From NCBI RefSeq assembly GCF_001194135.2, contig NC_068983.1, positions 45,553,065-45,586,929 of the forward strand: a stretch of DNA of 33,865 bases, in the 5' to 3' direction. The stretch comes from Octopus bimaculoides (taxonomy: Eukaryota). Of the stretch, positions 4,376 through 32,711 are shown piece after piece (the first letter of the stretch is position 1; every line of letters starts with the position of its first letter). Position numbers and translations under genes: made by a program. The notes under the pieces are model-generated. The model saw only the letters and a program-made list of their open reading frames with translations, did not search any database and was not told the DNA's origin.

Positions 4376-4493
4376 TGATAAAGGGAGTGTAACATTTTCC
4401 CTCTCGAAATGATGAGTAAGAAATGTGAATGACAGATAAATGTTGGATATACATACATATCTGTGTGTATATGTGTGCGCGTGCGTGTGAGTG

Positions 4494-4804
4494 TTTGCAT
4501 GGAAAACAAACCTCACCCAGCTATTCTGATTATATGTCTGTGCACACGTTTGAATGTGGTGTGTGCCAGAGGGTTTGCAAATCCAATGGGGGTCTTAAAA
4601 GACATGTTAGGATCCACAATGAGCAGAACTTACTTGCAGGTATTGGTAGTGCAAATCAGAGGTGCAATCTGTGTGGGTGTTTTTTCAAAACACTGTCTGG
4701 TTTAAAAAGCCACATCAGACGCCATGAAAGGGCTAAGGTGTAGGTGCAGGAGGTGGTCAAACTCTGTTTAAGGAGTAGACAACCACGATATATATATATA
4801 TATA
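4494..4804 (+). mobile_element. 5'-truncated LINE 3' end (RTE-like) encoding two C2H2 zinc fingers, short 3' UTR and (AT)n tail
   Basis: Open frame FECGVCQRVCKSNGGLKRHVRIH...RCNLCGCFFKTLSGLKSHIRRHERAKV* has two C-x2-C-x12-H-x3-H fingers (4555-4617, 4663-4725). Stop at 4741-4743, ~45-nt UTR, then (AT)n; the 5' side abuts a (TG)n tract. LINE origin and clade are inferred. Confidence 0.65.
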
Positions 4805-6739
4805 NNNNNNNNNNNNNNNNNNNNNNNNNNNNNNNNNNNNNNNNNNNNNNNNNNNNNNNNNNNNNNNNNNNNNNNNNNNNNNNNNNNNNNNNNNNNNNNN
4901 NNNNNNNNNNNNNNNNNNNNNNNNNNNNNNNNNNNNNNNNNNNNNNNNNNNNNNNNNNNNNNNNNNNNNNNNNNNNNNNNNNNNNNNNNNNNNNNNNNNN
5001 NNNNNNNNNNNNNNNNNNNNNNNNNNNNNNNNNNNNNNNNNNNNNNNNNNNNNNNNNNNNNNNNNNNNNNNNNNNNNNNNNNNNNNNNNNNNNNNNNNNN
5101 NNNNNNNNNNNNNNNNNNNNNNNNNNNNNNNNNNNNNNNNNNNNNNNNNNNNNNNNNNNNNNNNNNNNNNNNNNNNNNNNNNNNNNNNNNNNNNNNNNNN
5201 NNNNNNNNNNNNNNNNNNNNNNNNNNNNNNNNNNNNNNNNNNNNNNNNNNNNNNNNNNNNNNNNNNNNNNNNNNNNNNNNNNNNNNNNNNNNNNNNNNNN
5301 NNNNNNNNNNNNNNNNNNNNNNNNNNNNNNNNNNNNNNNNNNNNNNNNNNNNNNNNNNNNNNNNNNNNNNNNNNNNNNNNNNNNNNNNNNNNNNNNNNNN
5401 NNNNNNNNNNNNNNNNNNNNNNNNNNNNNNNNNNNNNNNNNNNNNNNNNNNNNNNNNNNNNNNNNNNNNNNNNNNNNNNNNNNNNNNNNNNNNNNNNNNN
5501 NNNNNNNNNNNNNNNNNNNNNNNNNNNNNNNNNNNNNNNNNNNNNNNNNNNNNNNNNNNNNNNNNNNNNNNNNNNNNNNNNNNNNNNNNNNNNNNNNNNN
5601 NNNNNNNNNNNNNNNNNNNNNNNNNNNNNNNNNNNNNNNNNNNNNNNNNNNNNNNNNNNNNNNNNNNNNNNNNNNNNNNNNNNNNNNNNNNNNNNNNNNN
5701 NNNNNNNNNNNNNNNNNNNNNNNNNNNNNNNNNNNNNNNNNNNNNNNNNNNNATATATGTATGTATGTATGTATGTATGTATATACACACACGTGTGTGT
5801 GTGTGCTTTGCTAAAACTTTTACTTGAAGATTCCCTACGAGAATTTTATTGATTTAATGTAAAAAAAAATTCAAACAGGACACGCTACTCCTCAATGTAT
5901 AATTATTAACTTATAATAAAGAATAGACAATATTTATGTCCTGTCCTGACAATTTCACTGGCGTTTATTTTGTCGTGATAATAGTGATAGTATAGAATTA
6001 CATTATTATTTCAGTGCATTTCGTTATTTCGTTGTCCATTAAAATGAGATTTTATTGCATTTATAGTTCAGTGGGATGTACGTTTGGCACGTGACTAAAG
6101 AGATACGCCAAGAGAGCATGAACTATCATTAGATATAGGACTAATAAACTCTTAATACATAAACATATATGTCCACAGAGGCAAATATGTGTACAGAAAA
6201 CCTACTATATTTCTGTTAAAATATAGTTATTACTGCGAACGTCACTGACGGCTAATAACGGTAAATTTTGACGGTTTAAAAAAATTCTAGCAGCATCACC
6301 GTGTATGAAAGCAGCAGCGCTCTCATACTGCATGGACATCTAAGAAATTCCGGGTTTGAGTCTGGAATGCTGGAAGACCACTGGGAAACTTCTCAGCTTT
6401 TGTTAAAGCATCTCTAGGATGTCATATTGATATAAAATCATCGTAATGCAAGGAAAGGCTTTGAACATTTTAGTGATCGTTTTGTTTGAGCTTGAGATTA
6501 TGGCGATTCTGCACTCCTGAGCCTGAGACCCATATTCGCACTGGATATCTTGCCCGGGTTTATCTCTGGATTATGTTAGTTTTTGGAGAGGATATGCGAG
6601 GAGCTCTGCAAGCCTTATTGGACCTAAAATTTTAGGTTGTGAAATTGCCAGCGAAGTGAACTTCTGACGCCCAGTGGAGTAGGTGGGCTTCGTCGCGGGC
6701 GAGAACTCAGTTGAAGTGGACGGTAGGTGCAATAAACTC

Positions 6740-8937: not shown

Positions 8938-9716
8938 NNNNNNNNNNNNNNNNNNNNNNNNNNNNNNNNNNNNNNNNNNNNNNNNNNNNNNNNNNNNNNN
9001 NNNNNNNNNNNNNNNNNNNNNNNNNNNNNNNNNNNNNNNNNNNNNNNNNNNNNNNNNNNNNNNNNNNNNNNNNNNNNNNNNNNNNNNNNNNNNNNNNNNN
9101 NNNNNNNNNNNNNNNNNNNNNNNNNNNNNNNNNNNNNNNNNNNNNNNNNNNNNNNNNNNNNNNNNNNNNNNNNNNNNNNNNNNNNNNNNNNNNNNNNNNN
9201 NNNNNNNNNNNNNNNNNNNNNNNNNNNNNNNNNNNNNNNNNNNNNNNNNNNNNNNNNNNNNNNNNNNNNNNNNNNNNNNNNNNNNNNNNNNNNNNNNNNN
9301 NNNNNNNNNNNNNNNNNNNNNNNNNNNNNNNNNNNNNNNNNNNNNNNNNNNNNNNNNNNNNNNNNNNNNNNNNNNNNNNNNNNNNNNNNNNNNNNNNNNN
9401 NNNNNNNNNNNNNNNNNNNNNNNNNNNNNNNNNNNNNNNNNNNNNNNNNNNNNNNNNNNNNNNNNNNNNNNNNNNNNNNNNNNNNNNNNNNNNNNNNNNN
9501 NNNNNNNNNNNNNNNNNNNNNNNNNNNNNNNNNNNNNNNNNNNNNNNNNNNNNNNNNNNNNNNNNNNNNNNNNNNNNNNNNNNNNNNNNNNNNNNNNNNN
9601 NNNNNNNNNNNNNNNNNNNNNNNNNNNNNNNNNNNNNNNNNNNNNNNNNNNNNNNNNNNNNNNNNNNNNNNNNNNNNNNNNNNNNNNNNNNNNNNNNNNN
9701 NNNNNNNNNNNNNNNN

Positions 9717-9754
<38 letters not shown>

Positions 9755-11547: not shown

Positions 11548-11715
11548 CATATGCATACATATATATATATACATATACATATACATACATATATATATAT
11601 ATATATATACATATGCATACATATATATATATACATATACATATACATATATATATATACACACACACATATATATACACACATATATACATACACACAC
11701 ACACATATATACACG
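11400..11715. repeat. (TA)n/(TACA)n compound microsatellite
   Basis: Directly visible; source of the YIYI ORFs. Confidence 0.95.
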
Positions 11716-12700
11716 CACTATTTTACGTACGCTTGTACGTATCATTTGAAAGGTAACGTATGACTTATTTTACAACCGGAGCCCAGTCATTAAAAGTAAA
11801 CAAACTGGTAACACCATAGACATTACCAATTCATTTGATCTGATCGATCTGAGGTGGGAGTTCTTCAGATCTGTTTAAAACGTCCATTAGAGAAGTCAAA
11901 CCCATGTTCTACCCATTGAGTGATGAATAACATAGTTATTGACAGTAAATATAAACCATGATTCAGTCAAACCTCTTGATCTATTTTGCATAATAGTTCA
12001 CGAGGTCACCATGCGGTTTGATTTGTTAGCAGGACGCAAAACACCGTTTTGAAATATTTTCTTAATGTTAATAAAATGATATGCTTATGAAAAAAGACAT
12101 TACTTACAAAAATATTAATATTAATGTATACCGCACGTTGAATTAAAAAATGTTGGCAAAAATCTGTCTTTCTCTCCATTTAGCTATATTTATTGTTCTG
12201 TGTACACAAATTTATCTATCTATCTATCTATCTAACAGTCAGTCACTTTGTTTTGCCTACCAAGTTTAATAAGTGTGCGATGTACATATATATATATATA
12301 TANNNNNNNNNNNNNNNNNNNNNNNNNNNNNNNNNNNNNNNNNNNNNNNNNNNNNNNNNNNNNNNNNNNNNNNNNNNNNNNNNNNNNNNNNNNNNNNNNN
12401 NNNNNNNNNNNNNNNNNNNNNNNNNNNNNNNNNNNNNNNNNNNNNNNNNNNNNNNNNNNNNNNNNNNNNNNNNNNNNNNNNNNNNNNNNNNNNNNNNNNN
12501 NNNNNNNNNNNNNNNNNNNNNNNNNNNNNNNNNNNNNNNNNNNNNNNNNNNNNNNNNNNNNNNNNNNNNNNNNNNNNNNNNNNNNNNNNNNNNNNNNNNN
12601 NNNNNNNNNNNNNNNNNNNNNNNNNNNNNNNNNNNNNNNNNNNNNNNNNNNNNNNNNNNNNNNNNNNNNNNNNNNNNNNNNNNNNNNNNNNNNNNNNNNN

Positions 12701-12732
<32 letters not shown>

Positions 12733-13450: not shown

Positions 13451-14115
13451 TAGAGCGTTTTGTTTAGTTCGACTGCTGTCTTTGTGAATAACGCACGTGG
13501 TCTTTGGTTGTCTTGGCGGCGCGACGTTTTCCCTCTGCTTTAATGGAGGGGCGTCGTGTGATAACTTGTGAGGATTTGAATTATTCTTCTTCAGACTTTG
13601 TGTCGTCTGACGAAGAAATGGTGAGCTGTTTGAAGAAGATTGACATAGTAATAGAAACAAGGAATTTAGTTGTAGCAGCAAAGGGAAAAATTGAAGACAT
13701 AAGTCTGGAAGAGCTGATCGAGTTCAAGGAAATACTTAAAAGTGAGGAGAACGCCGTGAAAGTGCCCCTCCGCTAAGAAGTGTTAAAGGATAAGGAAGAG
13801 AGAACGGTTGTTTACAGGACATACGCGGTGACAACAAGAAAAATAGAAGTGGTGAAGGAGGCACAAGTTGAAAAGGCGTTGAGGCCATTCGGGCAAGGAT
13901 TTCCTACCTTGCCAGAGGAAAAGGTTTGGAACAGTGGAGGTGCAATTCCGGGAGGTAGCTACCACCAGGCTGCACTCAGCAACACCGCTGAGAACTGATG
14001 AAATGGTTCTTCTACCCGTATACCTTAGGAGACGTGCTTCCAGGGTTAGGGTAGAAGACATACCCACCAGAAGTGGATGCAGCCCGGCTGGTGGCTGCCA
14101 TACTGCTAGGTATGG
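13451..14115 (+). pseudogene. 5' fragment of a non-LTR retroelement: 5' UTR plus disrupted gag/ORF1-like N-terminal half
   Basis: ORFs 13504-13776, 13780-13998, 13934-14134 and 14073+ splice together across a stop and two frameshifts into EERTVVYRTYAVTTRKIEV...FGTVEVQF...VLLPVYLRRRASRVRVEDIP/VDAARLVAAILLG. This is homologous to the ORF at 28580-28270 on the minus strand. Confidence 0.8.
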
Positions 14116-14385
14116 TTCTAATTCCACTGCTTAACTTGCTGTGTTCTTTTTCCAGTCTCTCTCTTTGTTCAAGGGCTTATTTCCTCCTAGTAGTATTCAT
14201 TTCAAAGAACAATTACATAATCAGAGTTATCTTTCGTAATACGGTCAAACCCTTTTACCAAAAACACCACCAATACTCATCACTTCTCTGAATATTTAGC
14301 TCTATTTATTTTCCAAGGGTTTCGCATGTAAATTTCAACTCGAGATTCAAGCATAACACTACTGAACATAGTGCCTCTATTTGGC

Positions 14386-14595
14386 TTCAAATTTTGGCAC
14401 AAAGCCAACTATTTCGGGAAAGGGATAAATCGGTTACATCGACCTCCATTGCTCAAGTGGTACGTATTTTATCGACTCCGAAAGGATGAAATGCAAAGAC
14501 TACCACGGCAGAATTTCAACTCAGAACGTAAAGCCGGACGAAATGTCACTAAGCATTTGGCACAGCTTGGTGGCGATTCTGCCGGTTCACTGCCT
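14386..14595 (-). mobile_element. SINE family B copy 1 of cluster
   Basis: TTTATCGACTCCGAAAGGATGAAATGCAAAG...GAATTTCAACTCAGAACGTAAAG...GATTCTGCC is the reverse complement of the family core. Confidence 0.85.
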
Positions 14596-14856
14596 AAATA
14601 TTTTTACTTTGACCAATTTTTTCCAAGTGTTTTCTGCAAGCGCATTGCAATTTGGCCTTTTATTTCACTAAAAATTTCAACTGTTTCAAACAGGAAACGA
14701 AAAGCGATTTACGCAAATGACTCCGTATAAGAAAATGACTATCATGAAATAATCTGTAACTTTAACATTAAGAGAGACCACCACCTAATAAATCTTACGT
14801 CATATTTCAAGATTAGAATTATAATTGCATACTGTCACTAGTCACAGTAATTATAA

Positions 14857-15068
14857 TTTCAAATTTTGGCACTAGGCCAGCAATTTGGAGGAGGGGATAA
14901 GTTGATTGCCTCAGCTCCAGTGTTCAAGTGGTACTTATTTTATCGACCCCGAAGGGATGAAAGATAAAGTAGACCACGACAGAATTTGAACTCAGAACAT
15001 CAAGACGGACGAAATGCCGCTGAGCATTTAGTCCGGTGTTCAAGCGATTCTATCAGCTCTCCGCCTTG
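14857..15068 (-). mobile_element. SINE family B copy 2 of cluster
   Basis: TTTATCGACCCCGAAGGGATGAAAG...GAATTTGAACTCAGAAC...GATTCTATCAGCTC. Confidence 0.87.
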
Positions 15069-17514: not shown

Positions 17515-18343
17515 TTCTTCCAAAACCTCAAGAATTTCGTTCAGGTACTAGTCCAAAATGTAATTTGGACATTAATATTATAATGCAGTCTAGGAAATAT
17601 TTATTTTATGATACTTCTTTTGGGTCAGACACAACAGTTAGTTTTGATGAAAAGCTGAGGAAGGAGTTGAATTTCATGATTTAATAGGATGAATCATTAT
17701 TAAAAAATGACTTATTAAATTATAGTGACTCTGACAAGAGAATATTGCATGCGTTACCTACAAAACAGTAATATTGTTAACCGCATAAATAAGAAACGAA
17801 ATATTAAAACCTGCAAACAACTTATGGTTTTAATACTCGTTCTGAAGCTGGATGTTGGGTCTTTTTAAAACCTTATGATCAACCTTTGAGGACCATAAAT
17901 ATCAGTAGATTTTTAATAATAAACTTATGCTGACTACATTTGCACCAAAAGTTTTGCTGCTTCCACAGACGATAAACTATTGGAAAGAAATCTTTCCAAT
18001 ATGAACAAGCAAATCCCATAATTCTTCTCAGTAAACATCGAATCTAACGCTGTTTTAAAATATTATTTCATCGGTTATATGAATAGTTTGTAGATAACAT
18101 AGAACAGTACATGTGCCTATATTGATTCTCGTAGTATGTGCACGTACATACGAACAATAAATGGTTATCGCAGTAAATACACAAAACTATACATTACTAC
18201 TTTAACTTCCCAATATATGATGACATTAAGATTTTAAGTTCTCCTAGTCCATTATAGAAAATATATACCCTGTCCTACATTAACGGTTCCCGAAGGTGTT
18301 AGACCAGTCGTTCGGAGAAAGACAACATTAGATTACAATTATT

Positions 18344-18731
18344 GTGGAGGCGCAATGGCCCAGTGGTTAGGACAGCGGACTCGCGGTCGTAGGATCGCGG
18401 TTTCGATTCCCAGACTGGGCGTTGTGAGTGTTTATTCAGCGAAAATACCCAAAGCTCCACGAGGCTCCGGCAGGGGATGGTGGCGAACCCTGCTGTACTC
18501 TTCCACCACAACTTTCTCTCACTCTTACTTCCTGTTTCTGTTGTGCCCGTAATTCAAAAGGGTCAGCCTTGTCACAATGTGTCACGCTGAATATCCCTGA
18601 GAACTACATTAAGGGTGCACGTATCTGTGGAGAGCTCAGCCACTTGCACGTTAATTTCACGAGCAGGCTGTTCCGTTGATCGGATCAACTGGAACCCTAG
18701 ATGTCGTAAGCGACGGAATGCCAACAACAAC
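18344..18731 (+). mobile_element. Full-length SINE family A with 12-bp TSD
   Basis: Same head, body and (CAA)n tail as 1232-1614; ATTACAATTATT at 18332-18343 and 18732-18743. Confidence 0.93.
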
Positions 18732-20112: not shown

Positions 20113-20295
20113 AAGTAAAAGTTTGAGAAAGTTATGGTGAAAGAGTACAGCAGGGTTCGCCACCACCCCCTGCCGGAGCCTCGTGGAGCTTTAGGTGTTT
20201 TCGCTCAATAAACACTCACAACGCCCAATCTGGGAATCGAAACCGCGATCCTACGACCGCGAGTCCGCTACCTTAACCACTGGGCCATTGCGCCT

Positions 20296-20299
<4 letters not shown>
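20113..20299 (-). mobile_element. SINE family A, 5' half only
   Basis: Ends in ...GGGAATCGAAACCGCGATCCTACGACCGCGAGTCCGCTACCTTAACCACTGGGCCATTGCGCCTCCAC, the reverse complement of the family A head. Confidence 0.92.
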
Positions 20300-20327
<28 letters not shown>

Positions 20328-20704
20328 NNNNNNNNNNNNNNNNNNNNNNNNNNNNNNNNNNNNNNNNNNNNNNNNNNNNNNNNNNNNNNNNNNNNNNNNN
20401 NNNNNNNNNNNNNNNNNNNNNNNNNNNNNNNNNNNNNNNNNNNNNNNNNNNNNNNNNNNNNNNNNNNNNNNNNNNNNNNNNNNNNNNNNNNNNNNNNNNN
20501 NNNNNNNNNNNNNNNNNNNNNNNNNNNNNNNNNNNNNNNNNNNNNNNNNNNNNNNNNNNNNNNNNNNNNNNNNNNNNNNNNNNNNNNNNNNNNNNNNNNN
20601 NNNNNNNNNNNNNNNNNNNNNNNNNNNNNNNNNNNNNNNNNNNNNNNNNNNNNNNNNNNNNNNNNNNNNNNNNNNNNNNNNNNNNNNNNNNNNNNNNNNN
20701 NNNN

Positions 20705-20775
<71 letters not shown>

Positions 20776-26651: not shown

Positions 26652-26944
26652 AGTTGTGTTTATTCCTTCTCGAGCCATGCCTGGCTCATAAGAGCCGGTT
26701 TCTCGGTTTCATTGGCGTATAGGTTCCCCACGTGGATGAGACGCCAGTCCGTCACAGGTGAGCTGCTAGATGAAAGAGGAAAGAGTGAGTGAAAGTTGTG
26801 GTGGAAGAGTCAGCAGAGGTTCTCCATTACCTTCTGCCGGATCCGGGTGGAGCTTAGGTGCTCCACGCCCGGTCTGAGATTCGAACCCGGGATCCCTCGA
26901 CCGCGCGTCCGCTGCTCTAACCATTAAGCCATGAGCCTCCACAT
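26652..26944 (-). mobile_element. SINE family A' (family A-like head, different 3' tail) with 11-bp TSD
   Basis: Head on the minus strand is GTGGAGGCTCATGGCTTAATGGTTAGAGCAGCGGACGCGCGGTC...GGTTCGAATCTC. TAGGAACTATG flanks it at 26641-26651 and 26945-26955. Confidence 0.88.
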
Positions 26945-27267
26945 TAGGAACTATGCTTTCACTAATTGCTTTGTGTTATGTCCCGCATTATGACGACGTA
27001 TTTTGCCATCTCTGCGGGATTGGCCCGAACAGCGTACCTCGGTGACTGTATTTCGTTCATTGCCTATAAAGGGTATACAGAGAGAGGACGAACAAGGACA
27101 GACAAGACAGCACAAGTGGGGACTAAAGACATAAACAGATAAATGAAATGAAATTATATAAAAATGAAGATGTAATGGCTACTACTCGTCCCCACTTCCG
27201 AGTAGCACCATTTTAACTATATTTTTACATTATTTTAAATCTAACTTTTATCCGAATAATTATCTTA

Positions 27268-28873
27268 TTAAATGTAAAGCGGTTTCAGTTTTTCGAATTC
27301 TACCACGGGTGGCAGATGATAGTATCTTATTTCTACTCCTAATGGGTTTACTTCGTCCCCAAAGTTTACTTTTAATTTTTTATAGTTTTTTCATGTCAAT
27401 TAAAATGGGACTCTTATGTTTTCTTCTATAACTGTAATTACTGCCTTCATCTTTCCTATTTTTTCTTCAATTGCTGCATTCGTCCAATAGCGTGTTATAT
27501 ATGCTCTGTTTTTATAATTGTTTTGTGTTTCTTATGCGTCTGCTTGTGTGTAATCAATTAGTGAATCTGTGCTGTCAGAATTTGTTCGTATACGTGAAGT
27601 GTTTGTGAGTGCTTGTGCATATTTCATTGGTGTTACTGGACTGTATCTACGTGGTGGTGTATATTTGGTTGGGATTTCTGGACTGTCTGGTATATTCTTG
27701 CGTGTTAGTTGCTGTGTGGGCGTTTGTGTGTCACTCAGTTCTCTTTTCTTCTTTTTTTTTTAGAGTTCTTAAGGCGGTGGGGAGTTCTTGATGTCATTTC
27801 TCTTCCTATTCTGTGTTTCTTGGACTTCATCTGTGTCTACCTCCTCTGTACCTTTCTTCAACTTCTCGCTGCCACTGCTTTCCTTCTTGCATATTGGCTT
27901 GGTGACGGTGGAGAACAGTAGAAGTTTGTTGGAAGGAGGCGCTGGACTGGGGTTGACACCGCCGGTAGAGGTGCTTGGTTATCGAGAAGGGGATGTATGG
28001 TTATCGAGAAGGGGCTGTTTGGTTATCGAGAAGGGAGCAATTTGTCTTAATATGGCCCTTCTCACTCCAATGATAGCATGTGGAAGGTCTTCTCTCCACT
28101 ACCACAGGCAGCCTCACACCCTATGGTAGCTCAACCTCCTCCGTCATCTCTTGGAGATCAAGTGTGGTGGCCCGAACCACGACTTCTAGGCCACATCCCC
28201 ACCAATCTAGCGGCTTTGCCCGGCCCACCTGTAACGCTTGCGGGTCATCCCCGGCGTCCATCAGGACAGCTGCCAGCAGCCACATTTCACTGATATCCGG
28301 GGACACCCCGCCAACTCCCACTCCTGCCATTCGCCCTCCGAGGCAAGTTGGCAGCAGTACCCACCTTTCCGATTTCAAGGCTATAGCGGAGCGTTCCGCT
28401 GCCCTATCCACAGTCGGGAAGCGCACCTCCATCATACCAAACATCCCGCGTCCACAGTAGAACTCAACACCATCACCCGGCTCCCTCAAACATTCCTCCA
28501 GCCCCTACCCCCTGGCCACGTCAACCCTCCTGGTTTCTAATGAGAGAGTTCTGCCAACTACCGTTTCTCCCTCCCTGCTTCTTGCTACCTCTCCCAGCGG
28601 CGTCAGACCCAGTCCCGCTCCTCCTTCTAACAACCTTATACTGTTCTTCACCGTCTCCAAGCCAACATTCAGCTCTCCGACTTCCAGCTGTTCAACAGTT
28701 GCAACAATACTATCGCGGCCCGCCACCGAAGCGCATCTCCCGGCGCGCGCCTGCACCTCTTCCACACTCTCCGCAATTCTCGCCCCTACCGGGGAAAAAA
28801 TGCAACAAAAGCAAACAATATCACAAGCCAAAACAATCGTCCTCAACAGGTAACCCCACCAAGGACATCCCAT
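27268..28873 (-). pseudogene. Disrupted gag/ORF1-like protein (~520 aa) with CCHC-type zinc knuckle
   Basis: ORFs 28903-28505 and 28489-28121 continue past a TAG into GVRLPVVVERRPST-CYHWSEKGHIKTNC (28078-28037; Cx2Cx4Hx4C with the second C changed to W). A S/T/P/K-rich linker follows, then a C-terminal block ending ...VVEFEKLKPLYI* (stop 27270-27268). Several frameshifts; homologous to 13504-14115. Confidence 0.78.
27977..28036. repeat. 22-bp-period triplication inside ORF1
   Basis: GGTTATCGAGAAGGG at 27977, 27999 and 28021. Confidence 0.95.
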
Positions 28874-29112
28874 CTGCAACGATACAAAATACAAAAGAAC
28901 CAAAAAATAGCTCGCAGACTGACACTATTGACTGTATCAGTCCACTATTTATTGGTAGTGGACCAGCCCACGTCTCACTTGGGGGCGTCTGCCACAACAC
29001 TTCGCCTACCTAAATAGTTGCAAGCAGACCCAGAAACTCTCTCGGTGCTCCGGCTTAAAACTATCAGATCGTGCAGAATGTGTCAGTTACAGTAGTGAGC
29101 TGCTACTTTTTG

Positions 29113-32070: not shown

Positions 32071-32711
32071 CTTGTTTGAAATTGGATGAATCCTTCGAGA
32101 AAAGAGTAAGACACCTTCTTTGCAATACCACTACCTCATCGGTTTCTCAGTGTAGAACTTGACTGGGTATAGAAGTTGCTTATAGGAGCTGTTGTTGTTG
32201 TTGTTGTTGTTGTTGTTGTGTTGCACATGGCGATTGTTGAAATTTGATTTAGTTCTAAAAGGTTCGTGACGACTTTGTCTTTGTTGTTGTTGTTTTGATG
32301 TTGTCGATGATGATGATGAAGACAACGACAACGACGGCGACGGTGGTGGCGGCGTCGGTGGCGGTATCNNNNNNNNNNNNNNNNNNNNNNNNNNNNNNNN
32401 NNNNNNNNNNNNNNNNNNNNNNNNNNNNNNNNNNNNNNNNNNNNNNNNNNNNNNNNNNNNNNNNNNNNNNNNNNNNNNNNNNNNNNNNNNNNNNNNNNNN
32501 NNNNNNNNNNNNNNNNNNNNNNNNNNNNNNNNNNNNNNNNNNNNNNNNNNNNNNNNNNNNNNNNNNNNNNNNNNNNNNNNNNNNNNNNNNNNNNNNNNNN
32601 NNNNNNNNNNNNNNNNNNNNNNNNNNNNNNNNNNNNNNNNNNNNNNNNNNNNNNNNNNNNNNNNNNNNNNNNNNNNNNNNNNNNNNNNNNCTCAGTATTA
32701 TAATTGCTGTT

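What the first reader, a model, noticed from the sequence alone, without database searches (positions are those of the whole stretch)
27052..28928. Complete TSD-flanked retroelement encoding only a gag/ORF1-like zinc-knuckle protein: a candidate cephalopod 'half-LINE'
Seen: 1,877 bp bounded by a perfect 9-bp direct repeat (TGACTGTAT). It has a ~55-nt leader, one ~520-codon disrupted ORF with a Cx2Cx4Hx4C-type knuckle, and a 216-nt 3' UTR, with no room or motifs for endonuclease or RT. Established: mammalian HAL1 elements are ORF1-only non-autonomous L1 derivatives, and L1/Tx1-type ORF1s often carry CCHC knuckles. Inference: a non-autonomous family that makes its own RNA-binding or packaging protein and borrows RT in trans. 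With the divergent homologue at 13.5 kb, this points to a family radiation that I am not aware of being described in molluscs. It is also raw material for gag-like gene domestication.
Basis: partly seen in the sequence, partly recalled or inferred. Interest (0 to 1): 0.82.

Follow-up and report, generated by a model that had tools for sequence, protein, structure and literature searches.

The report
Dead ORF1-only LINE copy in octopus
This 1.9-kb stretch is a decayed copy of an octopus jumping gene that kept only the RNA-binding (ORF1) half of a LINE and lost the copying enzyme; such elements are known in mammals, flies and mosquitoes but, in the literature I could search, not in cephalopods.

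Summary
A 1,877-bp unit (27052-28928, sense strand minus) lies between perfect 9-bp repeats. It carries one disrupted ORF of about 495 codons and a 213-nt 3' UTR, and has no endonuclease or reverse transcriptase.

An exhaustive HMMER search found 164 related protein clusters; all 21 looked up with a named source are from octopods. In three loci (O. sinensis, O. vulgaris, Argonauta hians) the homologous ORF1 is followed by an APE+RT ORF2, so the protein is a LINE ORF1. Its predicted core is two RRM-like domains plus a CCHC knuckle.

In five other loci (O. vulgaris, O. bimaculoides, one sequencing-run contig) ORF1 runs straight into a homologous 3' UTR with no ORF2. A profile of those 3' UTRs hits the window once, ending at the 9-bp repeat (E=5e-8). 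The ORF1-only structure is therefore a family trait, not a one-off deletion.

Not shown: mobilisation in trans, the identity of the autonomous partner, an empty site, and genome-wide copy number.

Verdict: a new member of a known kind (HAL1, HeT-A, Ag-Sponge). Interest is moderate.

The parts
27052..28928 (-). Whole ORF1-only element (5' end at 28928, 3' end at 27052), 1,877 bp
   Evidence: Bounded by the 9-bp repeats. Colinear with the 1,894-nt L004/L008 composite ORF1-only unit.
28929..28937 (.). Direct repeat TGACTGTAT, copy next to the element's 5' end (putative TSD)
   Evidence: The true TSD may be 7-9 bp, because the element ends show microhomology with it.
27043..27051 (.). Direct repeat TGACTGTAT, copy next to the element's 3' end (putative TSD)
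   Evidence: It abuts the homology-defined 3' terminus.
28748..28928 (-). Probable 5' UTR (about 180 nt); starts AATAGTGTCAGT, resembling the family 5' ends CCGACAGGTCAGT (L004) and CCGAYAGGACGT (L007)
   Evidence: Family N-termini map to about 28747-28718. The 5' UTR profile search was not significant, so this boundary is inferred.
27265..28747 (-). Disrupted ORF1 (about 495 codons including the inserted duplication); frame -1, then frame -2
28079..28600 (-). ORF1 core: N-terminal helical segment and two RRM-like domains
   Evidence: tblastn with P0001, P0003 and others. AlphaFold model pLDDT 80; Foldseek top hits are all tandem-RRM proteins.
28037..28078 (-). Degenerate CCHC zinc knuckle CYHWSEKGHIKTNC (second Cys replaced by Trp)
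27874..28041 (-). Copy-specific insertion: 3x22-bp tandem repeat (27976-28041) plus an inverted copy (27888-27972) of the N-terminal coding segment 28587-28671
   Evidence: Absent from the other copies examined.
28587..28671 (-). Source arm of the 85-nt inverted repeat (84% complementary to 27888-27972)
27277..27513 (-). Conserved ORF1 C-terminal domain (...KNYKKLKVNFGDEVNPLG...PPVVEFEKLKPLYI)
   Evidence: tblastn with the P0028 C-terminus, E=5e-10. Alignment A5.
27052..27264 (-). 3' UTR, homologous to the 3' UTRs of other ORF1-only copies; ends CCCTTTATAGGCAATGAACGAA
   Evidence: nhmmer profiles give E=8.9e-6 and 4.9e-8, each with a single hit in the window. 78% identity to the L008 3' UTR, z=11.
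27175..27211 (-). 3' UTR hairpin (stem GCTACTCG / CGAGTAGTAGC, loop GAAGTGGGGA)
   Evidence: Stem sequence differs but stays complementary in L008, and the G-rich loop is kept. 6 of 8 pairs show compensatory change among 6 copies. Suggestive only.
13699..14105 (+). Second, fragmentary family member (N-terminal half of ORF1, a different subfamily)
   Evidence: tblastn hits of P0001, P0003, P0004, P0021, P0022 and P0033; sequence.

Best explanation
The region is an old, inactivated insertion of a non-autonomous LINE that encodes only ORF1.

SHOWN:
- The element has a 5' UTR and a full-length but broken ORF1. That ORF1 comprises two RRM-like domains, a CCHC knuckle, a K/E-rich linker and a conserved C-terminal domain.
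- It is followed immediately by a roughly 213-nt 3' UTR.
- ORF2 (APE endonuclease plus reverse transcriptase) follows the homologous ORF1 in autonomous octopod LINEs but is absent here.
- The same ORF1-to-3'UTR architecture recurs in divergent copies in at least two Octopus species.

INFERRED:
- The element's RNA was bound by its own ORF1 protein and reverse-transcribed at a nicked target by the ORF2 protein of a related autonomous LINE.
- That ORF2 protein would recognise the shared 3' end, that is, the conserved hairpin, the sequence boxes and the terminal ...GC.AATAAAGAA motif.
- Target-primed reverse transcription would then have left the 7-9-bp target-site duplication.
- After insertion the copy decayed: it lost its start codon, gained seven in-frame stops and a frameshift, lost a knuckle cysteine and acquired an internal inverted duplication.
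For: 1. ORF1 identity.
- phmmer against 1.84 billion representatives gave 164 hits at E<=1e-3, the best at 1.9e-26. All 21 looked up with a named source are octopod.
- Homologous ORF1s are followed by APE+RT ORF2 in L001, L005 and L007. Pfam finds Exo_endo_phos, RVT_1 and zf-RVT. The ORF2 is colinear with human L1 ORF2p at E=4e-42.

2. Fold.
- The AlphaFold model has pLDDT 80, and the Foldseek top hits are all tandem-RRM proteins.
- The knuckle matches retroviral NC and zf-CCHC.

3. No ORF2.
- There is no tblastn hit in the window or in L002, L003, L004, L006, L008 or L009.

4. A family, not a one-off.
- The window, L003A, L003B and L004 are colinear from the ORF1 C-terminus through the stop codon into the 3' UTR.
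- A 3' UTR profile built from ORF1-only copies hits the window once, at 27227-27092, E=4.9e-8. The mixed profile aligns as far as 27054.
- The window 3' UTR is 78% identical to that of L008.
- Unit lengths agree: 1,877 nt here against 1,894 nt for the composite.

5. Link to autonomous LINEs.
- The terminal motif CCTTGTGGC..AATAAAGAAA occurs only at 3' ends of LINE copies, including ORF1-only L002.
- Autonomous L005 has a clear 16-bp TSD.

6. Selection on ORF1.
- dN/dS between two ORF1-only copies (L004 and L009c) is 0.41 over 404 codons, binomial p=8e-6.
- ORF1-only ORF1s group apart from autonomous ones in an NJ tree without bootstrap support.
Against: - A profile built from the three sampled autonomous 3' UTRs alone does not hit the window. 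It hits ORF1-only L008 and L002 only marginally (E=0.08 and 0.11). The true partner is therefore unidentified.
- 5' UTR homology is not statistically significant.
- No empty site was found, orthologous or paralogous.
- 9-bp repeats at this spacing are not rare in the window.
- Most other ORF1-only copies sit in head-to-tail arrays without visible TSDs. Part of the family's copy number may therefore come from DNA-level duplication rather than retrotransposition.
- The window copy has no close relative (more than 50% amino-acid identity) in the protein collections. Its own subfamily is therefore unsampled.
Confidence: 0.8

Rival explanations
1. ORF1-only copies are made again and again from autonomous LINEs, and do not propagate as an ORF1-only lineage. 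The cause would be RT template switching or a recurrent RNA-processing event that removes ORF2.
For: A conserved splice-donor-like GGTAAGT sits at the ORF1 stop of autonomous L001, L005 and L007, and NCBI's gene model for P0003 splices there. P0028, which has the ORF1-only type of C-terminus, groups with autonomous ORF1s in the NJ tree.
Against: ORF1-only copies L002, L006 and L003A retain the GTAAGT, so they were not spliced at that donor. The junction and 3' UTR are shared by copies whose ORF1 cores are only 35-40% identical. No sampled autonomous element has this 3' UTR. dN/dS below 1 between ORF1-only copies fits a propagating lineage.
Confidence: 0.1
2. A one-off event: an autonomous LINE copy lost ORF2 by an internal deletion at this locus, during or after insertion.
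For: Internal deletions and rearrangements do occur in these elements. This copy has its own inverted duplication, and L001 has a 177-nt inverted duplication in ORF2.
Against: The same ORF1-stop-to-3'UTR arrangement is present in at least five other loci in two or more species.
Confidence: 0.03
3. A host multigene family of gag-like RNA-binding proteins (domesticated ORF1) spread by tandem or segmental duplication. The window copy would be a pseudogene, and the 9-bp repeat a chance match.
For: Many copies lie in head-to-tail clusters at chromosome-internal sites. Some members are intact ORFs annotated as genes, for example P0009 (404 aa) and P0001. 9-bp repeats are common by chance.
Against: The 3' end defined by homology coincides with the repeat. 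The unit length matches that of other copies. The terminal motif is shared with bona fide LINEs. Most copies are decayed, and there are 164 divergent clusters, as expected of a transposable element.
Confidence: 0.05

Closest known systems
HAL1 ('half-L1') of mammals
   Same: A non-autonomous LINE derivative that keeps the 5' UTR, ORF1 and 3' UTR and lacks ORF2. HAL1 arose several times and depends on an autonomous relative (PMC5753468, citing Smit 1999 and Bao & Jurka 2010).
   Different: HAL1 derives from mammalian L1, whose ORF1p is the coiled-coil/RRM/CTD type (Pfam Transposase_22). The octopod ORF1 has two RRM-like domains plus a CCHC knuckle and a different C-terminal domain, with no Transposase_22 match. 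It has no poly(A) tail: copies end a few bases after AATAAA.
Ag-Sponge (Anopheles gambiae, CR1-derived) and the 'ORF1-present bipartite non-autonomous LINEs' of Kojima 2018 (PMC5786205)
   Same: An ORF1-only derivative of an APE-type LINE in an invertebrate. The ORF1 protein is proposed to act together with the autonomous partner's proteins.
   Different: Different host phylum. The clade of the octopod partner is undetermined: its ORF2 has zf-RVT and aligns end to end with L1 ORF2p, which does not establish a CR1 origin.
HeT-A of Drosophila telomeres (Jockey clade)
   Same: Encodes only a Gag/ORF1 protein with CCHC knuckles, relies on another element's RT, and occurs in head-to-tail arrays. 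Related octopod copies also form head-to-tail arrays with direct 3'-to-5' junctions.
   Different: The octopod arrays examined are chromosome-internal: 28 Mb of 58 Mb, 72 Mb of 127 Mb and 32 Mb of 40 Mb. The window copy is a solitary interstitial insertion with a putative TSD. There is no evidence of a telomeric role.
Type I LINE ORF1 proteins (RRM plus CCHC knuckle; Khazina & Weichenrieder 2009, from my own knowledge)
   Same: RRM-like domain(s) followed by a CCHC knuckle.
   Different: It has an added long K/E-rich linker and a conserved C-terminal domain of about 85 aa whose fold is unresolved.

Membership tests
ORF1-only non-autonomous LINE (HAL1 / HeT-A / Ag-Sponge kind) | Encoded protein is homologous to the ORF1 of autonomous LINEs | tested here: met
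   Homologous ORF1s are followed by APE+RT ORF2 in L001, L005 and L007.
ORF1-only non-autonomous LINE (HAL1 / HeT-A / Ag-Sponge kind) | No endonuclease or RT coding sequence between ORF1 and the 3' end | tested here: met
   Only 213 nt follow the stop codon. There is no tblastn hit to the family ORF2 anywhere in the window.
ORF1-only non-autonomous LINE (HAL1 / HeT-A / Ag-Sponge kind) | The structure recurs in independent copies (a family, not a single deletion) | tested here: met
   L002, L006, L003 (A and B), L008 and L009 lack ORF2. The junction and 3' UTR are shared.
ORF1-only non-autonomous LINE (HAL1 / HeT-A / Ag-Sponge kind) | 3' (and 5') ends shared with an autonomous partner | tested here: inconclusive
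   The terminal motif is shared with autonomous copies. However, the autonomous-only 3' UTR profile gives no hit on the window and E=0.08-0.11 on L008 and L002. The 5' UTR result is not significant.
ORF1-only non-autonomous LINE (HAL1 / HeT-A / Ag-Sponge kind) | Insertion by target-primed reverse transcription (TSD, empty site) | tested here: inconclusive
   A perfect 9-bp repeat abuts the homology-defined 3' end. No empty site is available. 9-mers repeat by chance fairly often.
ORF1-only non-autonomous LINE (HAL1 / HeT-A / Ag-Sponge kind) | Mobilised in trans by another element's ORF2 protein | not testable with these tools
   Needs a retrotransposition assay or polymorphic insertions.
HAL1 proper (L1-derived) | ORF1p of the L1 type (Transposase_22: coiled coil, RRM, CTD) | tested here: not met
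   No Pfam Transposase_22 hit for the window protein or ten relatives. zf-CCHC hits were found instead.
Type I LINE ORF1p (RRM + CCHC) | RRM fold | tested here: met
   AlphaFold model pLDDT 80. All top Foldseek hits are tandem-RRM proteins (probability up to 1.0, but TM only about 0.3 because of domain orientation).
Type I LINE ORF1p (RRM + CCHC) | CX2CX4HX4C zinc knuckle | tested here: met
   Canonical in relatives (Pfam zf-CCHC in P0001, P0016 and P0021; alignment). In the window copy the second Cys is Trp, so the feature is met for the family and decayed in this copy.
HeT-A-like telomeric retrotransposon | Head-to-tail arrays at chromosome ends | tested here: not met
   Arrays exist but lie far from the ends of chromosome-scale records. 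The window copy is solitary.

The most novel reading that the evidence does not exclude
Octopods harbour a long-lived, diversifying lineage of ORF1-only LINEs whose ORF1 is kept under purifying selection. Its 3' UTR, with a covarying hairpin, would be conserved far better than the protein (78% nucleotide identity against about 35-39% amino-acid identity). It spreads both by TSD-flanked insertion and as head-to-tail arrays, and so would be a cephalopod counterpart of HeT-A/HAL1. Some intact members (for example P0009) could be host-recruited gag-like genes.
Probability: 0.25. Interest if true: 0.65.

Novelty: new member of a known kind. Interest (0 to 1): 0.45.

Why it matters
ORF1-only LINEs are rare. 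The review I read (PMC5786205) names three cases: HAL1, HeT-A and Ag-Sponge. They bear on an open question, namely what ORF1 proteins contribute to retrotransposition and whether a parasite of a parasite gains by bringing its own RNA chaperone.

A cephalopod example would add a fourth, independent case. It has many divergent ORF1s, a conserved 3' UTR hairpin and both autonomous and ORF1-only relatives in chromosome-level assemblies, and its host genomes are famously rich in repeats.

It also flags about 160 'uncharacterized CCHC-type' octopus proteins in UniProt and RefSeq as transposable-element ORF1s rather than host genes. The window copy itself is dead and has no functional importance.

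Tried and rejected
- Pfam scan of the window protein: no hit. Rfam and tRNA scans of the window: nothing.
- Word-indexed homologue searches found nothing for the window protein. They found almost nothing for P0001 or for the A1 profile. Only the exhaustive HMMER search worked.
- Exact-protein look-ups for the window ORF, P0028 and P0009: not on record.
- BLASTN of the element against the first loci found no significant UTR similarity. My early by-eye UTR matches were only marginal on shuffling. They became convincing only with profiles and with locus L008.
- 5' UTR profile: not significant.
- A profile of the autonomous 3' UTRs alone does not reach the window.
- Paralogous empty site: none.
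- Twin priming as the origin of the internal inverted repeat was considered and set aside. Neither arm touches an element end, and both flanking ORF parts keep the same orientation.
- C-terminal domain: the model is poor (pLDDT 68) and there is no fold match below E=0.1.
- L004's 3' UTR lies in a 2.1-kb assembly gap, so that copy is uninformative for ORF2 absence.
Full report
**What is in the window**

The 9-mer TGACTGTAT lies at 27043-27051 and 28929-28937 and brackets 1,877 bp. The sense strand is minus. On that strand the 5' half is G-rich and the 3' half A-rich, and all protein similarity is on that strand.

Reading 28928 to 27052, the element contains the following.
- A T-rich leader.
- An ORF in frame -1 that runs through a core region to a degenerate knuckle, CYHWSEKGHIKTNC (28078-28037).
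- A segment at 27874-28041 made of three 22-bp tandem repeats plus an 85-nt inverted copy (84%) of the upstream coding segment 28587-28671.
- A K/E-rich linker and a conserved C-terminal domain in frame -2, ending in TAA TAA at 27270-27265.
- A 213-nt 3' UTR.

Seven in-frame stops and at least one frameshift interrupt the ORF.
- The knuckle has Trp in place of its second Cys.
- The '55-nt leader' runs only to a probably fortuitous ATG. Family N-termini (M.SYA.AA) align near 28747-28718, giving a leader of about 180 nt like that of L004. This is an inference.
- About 165 nt of the 'ORF' is a duplication private to this copy.

**Is the protein real, and what is it?**

Pfam and the word-indexed search found nothing. 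The exhaustive phmmer search found 164 cluster representatives at E<=1e-3, of which 30 are at E<=1e-10. All 21 looked up with a named source come from Octopus bimaculoides, O. sinensis, O. vulgaris or Argonauta hians, and they are annotated as uncharacterized or CCHC-type proteins.

The alignment of 28 cores shows a conserved pattern: RG..YGTVEV.F, then LLP.Y.GRR, IPPE....WLVAA, NW.G, and V.VEGR.P.C..CG..GH....C. An AlphaFold model of the window's core has mean pLDDT 80. Its best PDB fold matches are all tandem-RRM proteins such as hnRNP A1 UP1, HuR RRM1-2 and NONO/SFPQ. By sequence, only the knuckle matches solved structures. The C-terminal domain of the window (27513-27277) matches that of P0028 at E=5e-10.

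**It is a LINE ORF1**

- In L001 (O. sinensis) the homologous ORF1 is followed 40 nt later by a degenerate ORF2 with APE and RT motifs.
- In L005 (Argonauta hians) an intact 527-aa ORF1 is followed by an ORF2 with Exo_endo_phos, RVT_1 and zf-RVT. That ORF2 is colinear with human L1 ORF2p at E=4e-42. The element is flanked by a 16-bp TSD.
- L007 (O. vulgaris) holds three head-to-tail autonomous copies with a 5.28-kb period.

**The ORF1-only structure is a family trait**

tblastn with the family ORF2 finds nothing in the window, L002, L003, L004, L006, L008 or L009.
- L003, a Logan contig, holds tandem units in which the ORF1 C-terminus and stop codon are followed by about 80 nt, a hairpin and conserved boxes.
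- L008 (O. bimaculoides) shows ORF1 C-terminus, then a 330-nt 3' UTR, then the 5' end of the next unit.
- The window, L003A, L003B and L004 are colinear from the C-terminal codons through the stop codon into the 3' UTR.

Further support comes from the 3' UTR and from unit length.
- A 3' UTR profile built only from ORF1-only copies of other loci hits the 33.9-kb window exactly once, at 27227-27092 (-), E=4.9e-8.
- A mixed profile aligns to 27054, two bases from the proposed end.
- The window's 3' UTR is 78% identical to that of L008 over 130 columns (z=11-15 against shuffles). Yet the ORF1 cores of these two copies are only about 39% identical.
- The composite L004/L008 unit is 1,894 nt, against 1,877 nt here, and all HSPs are colinear.

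**Link to autonomous elements, and its limits**

The motif CCTTGTGGC..AATAAAGAAA occurs only at the 3' ends of LINE copies in 211 kb of fetched sequence. It is found on autonomous L001, L005 and L007 and on ORF1-only L002. L008 and the window carry degenerate versions.

However, a profile of the three autonomous 3' UTRs alone does not reach the window. It reaches L008 and L002 only at E about 0.1. The partner that supplied RT is therefore not among the sampled elements. Trans-mobilisation is inferred from the architecture and from what is known for HAL1, HeT-A and Ag-Sponge (PMC5786205).

**Signs of function in the lineage**

- The 3' UTR hairpin has different but complementary stems in the window and in L008, with a shared G-rich loop. 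Among six copies, 6 of 8 pairs show compensatory change. With so few, decayed sequences this is suggestive only.
- dN/dS between two ORF1-only copies of one O. bimaculoides subfamily is 0.41 over 404 codons (binomial p=8e-6). Other pairs give 0.51 and 1.05.
- In an unbootstrapped NJ tree the ORF1-only ORF1s (window, P0002, P0009, P0016, P0037, P0007) group apart from the autonomous ones (P0003, P0033, P0022). P0028 is an exception.

**The TSD**

A 9-bp repeat at this spacing is unremarkable by itself, since there are 201 such complexity-filtered pairs in the window. It does abut a 3' end fixed independently by homology, and the unit length matches that of relatives. My rough chance estimate is about 1e-2 to 1e-3.

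The repeat shows microhomology with both element ends, so the true TSD may be 7-9 bp. No empty site could be found.

**Comparison with the known, and verdict**

ORF1-only non-autonomous LINEs are an established kind: HAL1 from L1, HeT-A from Jockey and Ag-Sponge from CR1 (PMC5786205, PMC5753468). This element works like them but is not HAL1 by descent, because it has no L1-type ORF1p. It is not HeT-A-like in location either, because the arrays examined are chromosome-internal.

Searches of the held literature found no description of such elements in cephalopods. The octopus LINE paper deals with RTE and Dong elements. I could not consult Repbase or Dfam.

I rate it a new member of a known kind and of moderate interest. 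The copy in the window is dead.

Noticed in passing
window 27874-28041 and 28587-28671: An 85-nt inverted repeat (84%) plus a 3x22-bp tandem repeat sits just after the knuckle. It is an inverted duplication of N-terminal coding sequence, private to this copy among those examined, and its origin is unexplained. L001 has a different 177-nt, 98% inverted duplication inside ORF2 (L001 13307-13483 and 13918-14094).
   Followed up: partly
L007 4440-19170; L008 8447-10400; L009 9929-14589; L003 1-3539: Head-to-tail tandem arrays occur for both autonomous (5.28-kb period, 99.6-100% aa identity in ORF1) and ORF1-only units. They have direct 3'-end-to-5'-end junctions and no TSD between units, and they lie at chromosome-internal positions. 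End-to-end template jumping or unequal crossing-over could produce them; I did not distinguish the two.
   Followed up: partly
L001 ~11803; L005 ~11570-11590; L007 ~11330; L002 ~11150; L006 ~11168; L003 ~1913: A consensus 5' splice-donor-like GGTAAGT is conserved at or just after the ORF1 stop in both autonomous and ORF1-only elements. It is lost in the window copy. NCBI's gene model for P0003 splices at it. Its function is unknown.
   Followed up: no
window 27052-27264 vs L008 9405-9742: The 3' UTR is far better conserved (78% nt) than the ORF1 core (about 39% aa) between the window copy and the L004/L008 subfamily. This suggests either strong constraint on the 3' UTR or modular (recombinant) evolution.
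   Followed up: partly
window 26772-26946 (also 1227-1425, 18340-18538, 20127-20300): A tRNA-derived SINE-like repeat lies next to the insertion. Copies at 71-72% identity occur in the window, and others in L006 and L009. ARAGORN and Rfam call nothing.
   Followed up: partly
window 4429-4743 (+): A 104-aa ORF contains two C2H2 zinc fingers (FECGVCQRVCKSNGGLKRHVRIH; CNLCGCFFKTLSGLKSHIRRH). It could be a fragment of a ZNF gene or of a transposable element.
   Followed up: no
window 14371-14600 and 14860-15000: Two copies of an AAATTTTGGCAC.AGGCCA...TTTCGGG..GGG repeat, apparently an abundant octopus SINE-like element.
   Followed up: no
window ~2300-2750, 4790-5750, 8950-9720, 12300-12720, 20330-20720, 32370-32690: Runs of N next to microsatellites show that the window comes from a gapped draft assembly. 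The related O. bimaculoides loci (GCA_001194135.2) have gaps exactly in the 3' UTRs of several family copies.
   Followed up: no
L004 13156-13900: After the assembly gap lies another ORF1-like C-terminal motif (FDLNKLHPNDIGILKE), with no ORF2 hit nearby. It may be a further family member.
   Followed up: no
UniProt/RefSeq entries behind P0001, P0003, P0007, P0009, P0022, P0028 and others: About 160 octopod proteins annotated as 'uncharacterized', 'CCHC-type domain-containing' or even 'EPM2A-interacting 1-like' are LINE ORF1 proteins. P0052 (1,041 aa) fuses an ORF1 fragment to a WD40 protein, probably a gene-model artefact.
   Followed up: partly
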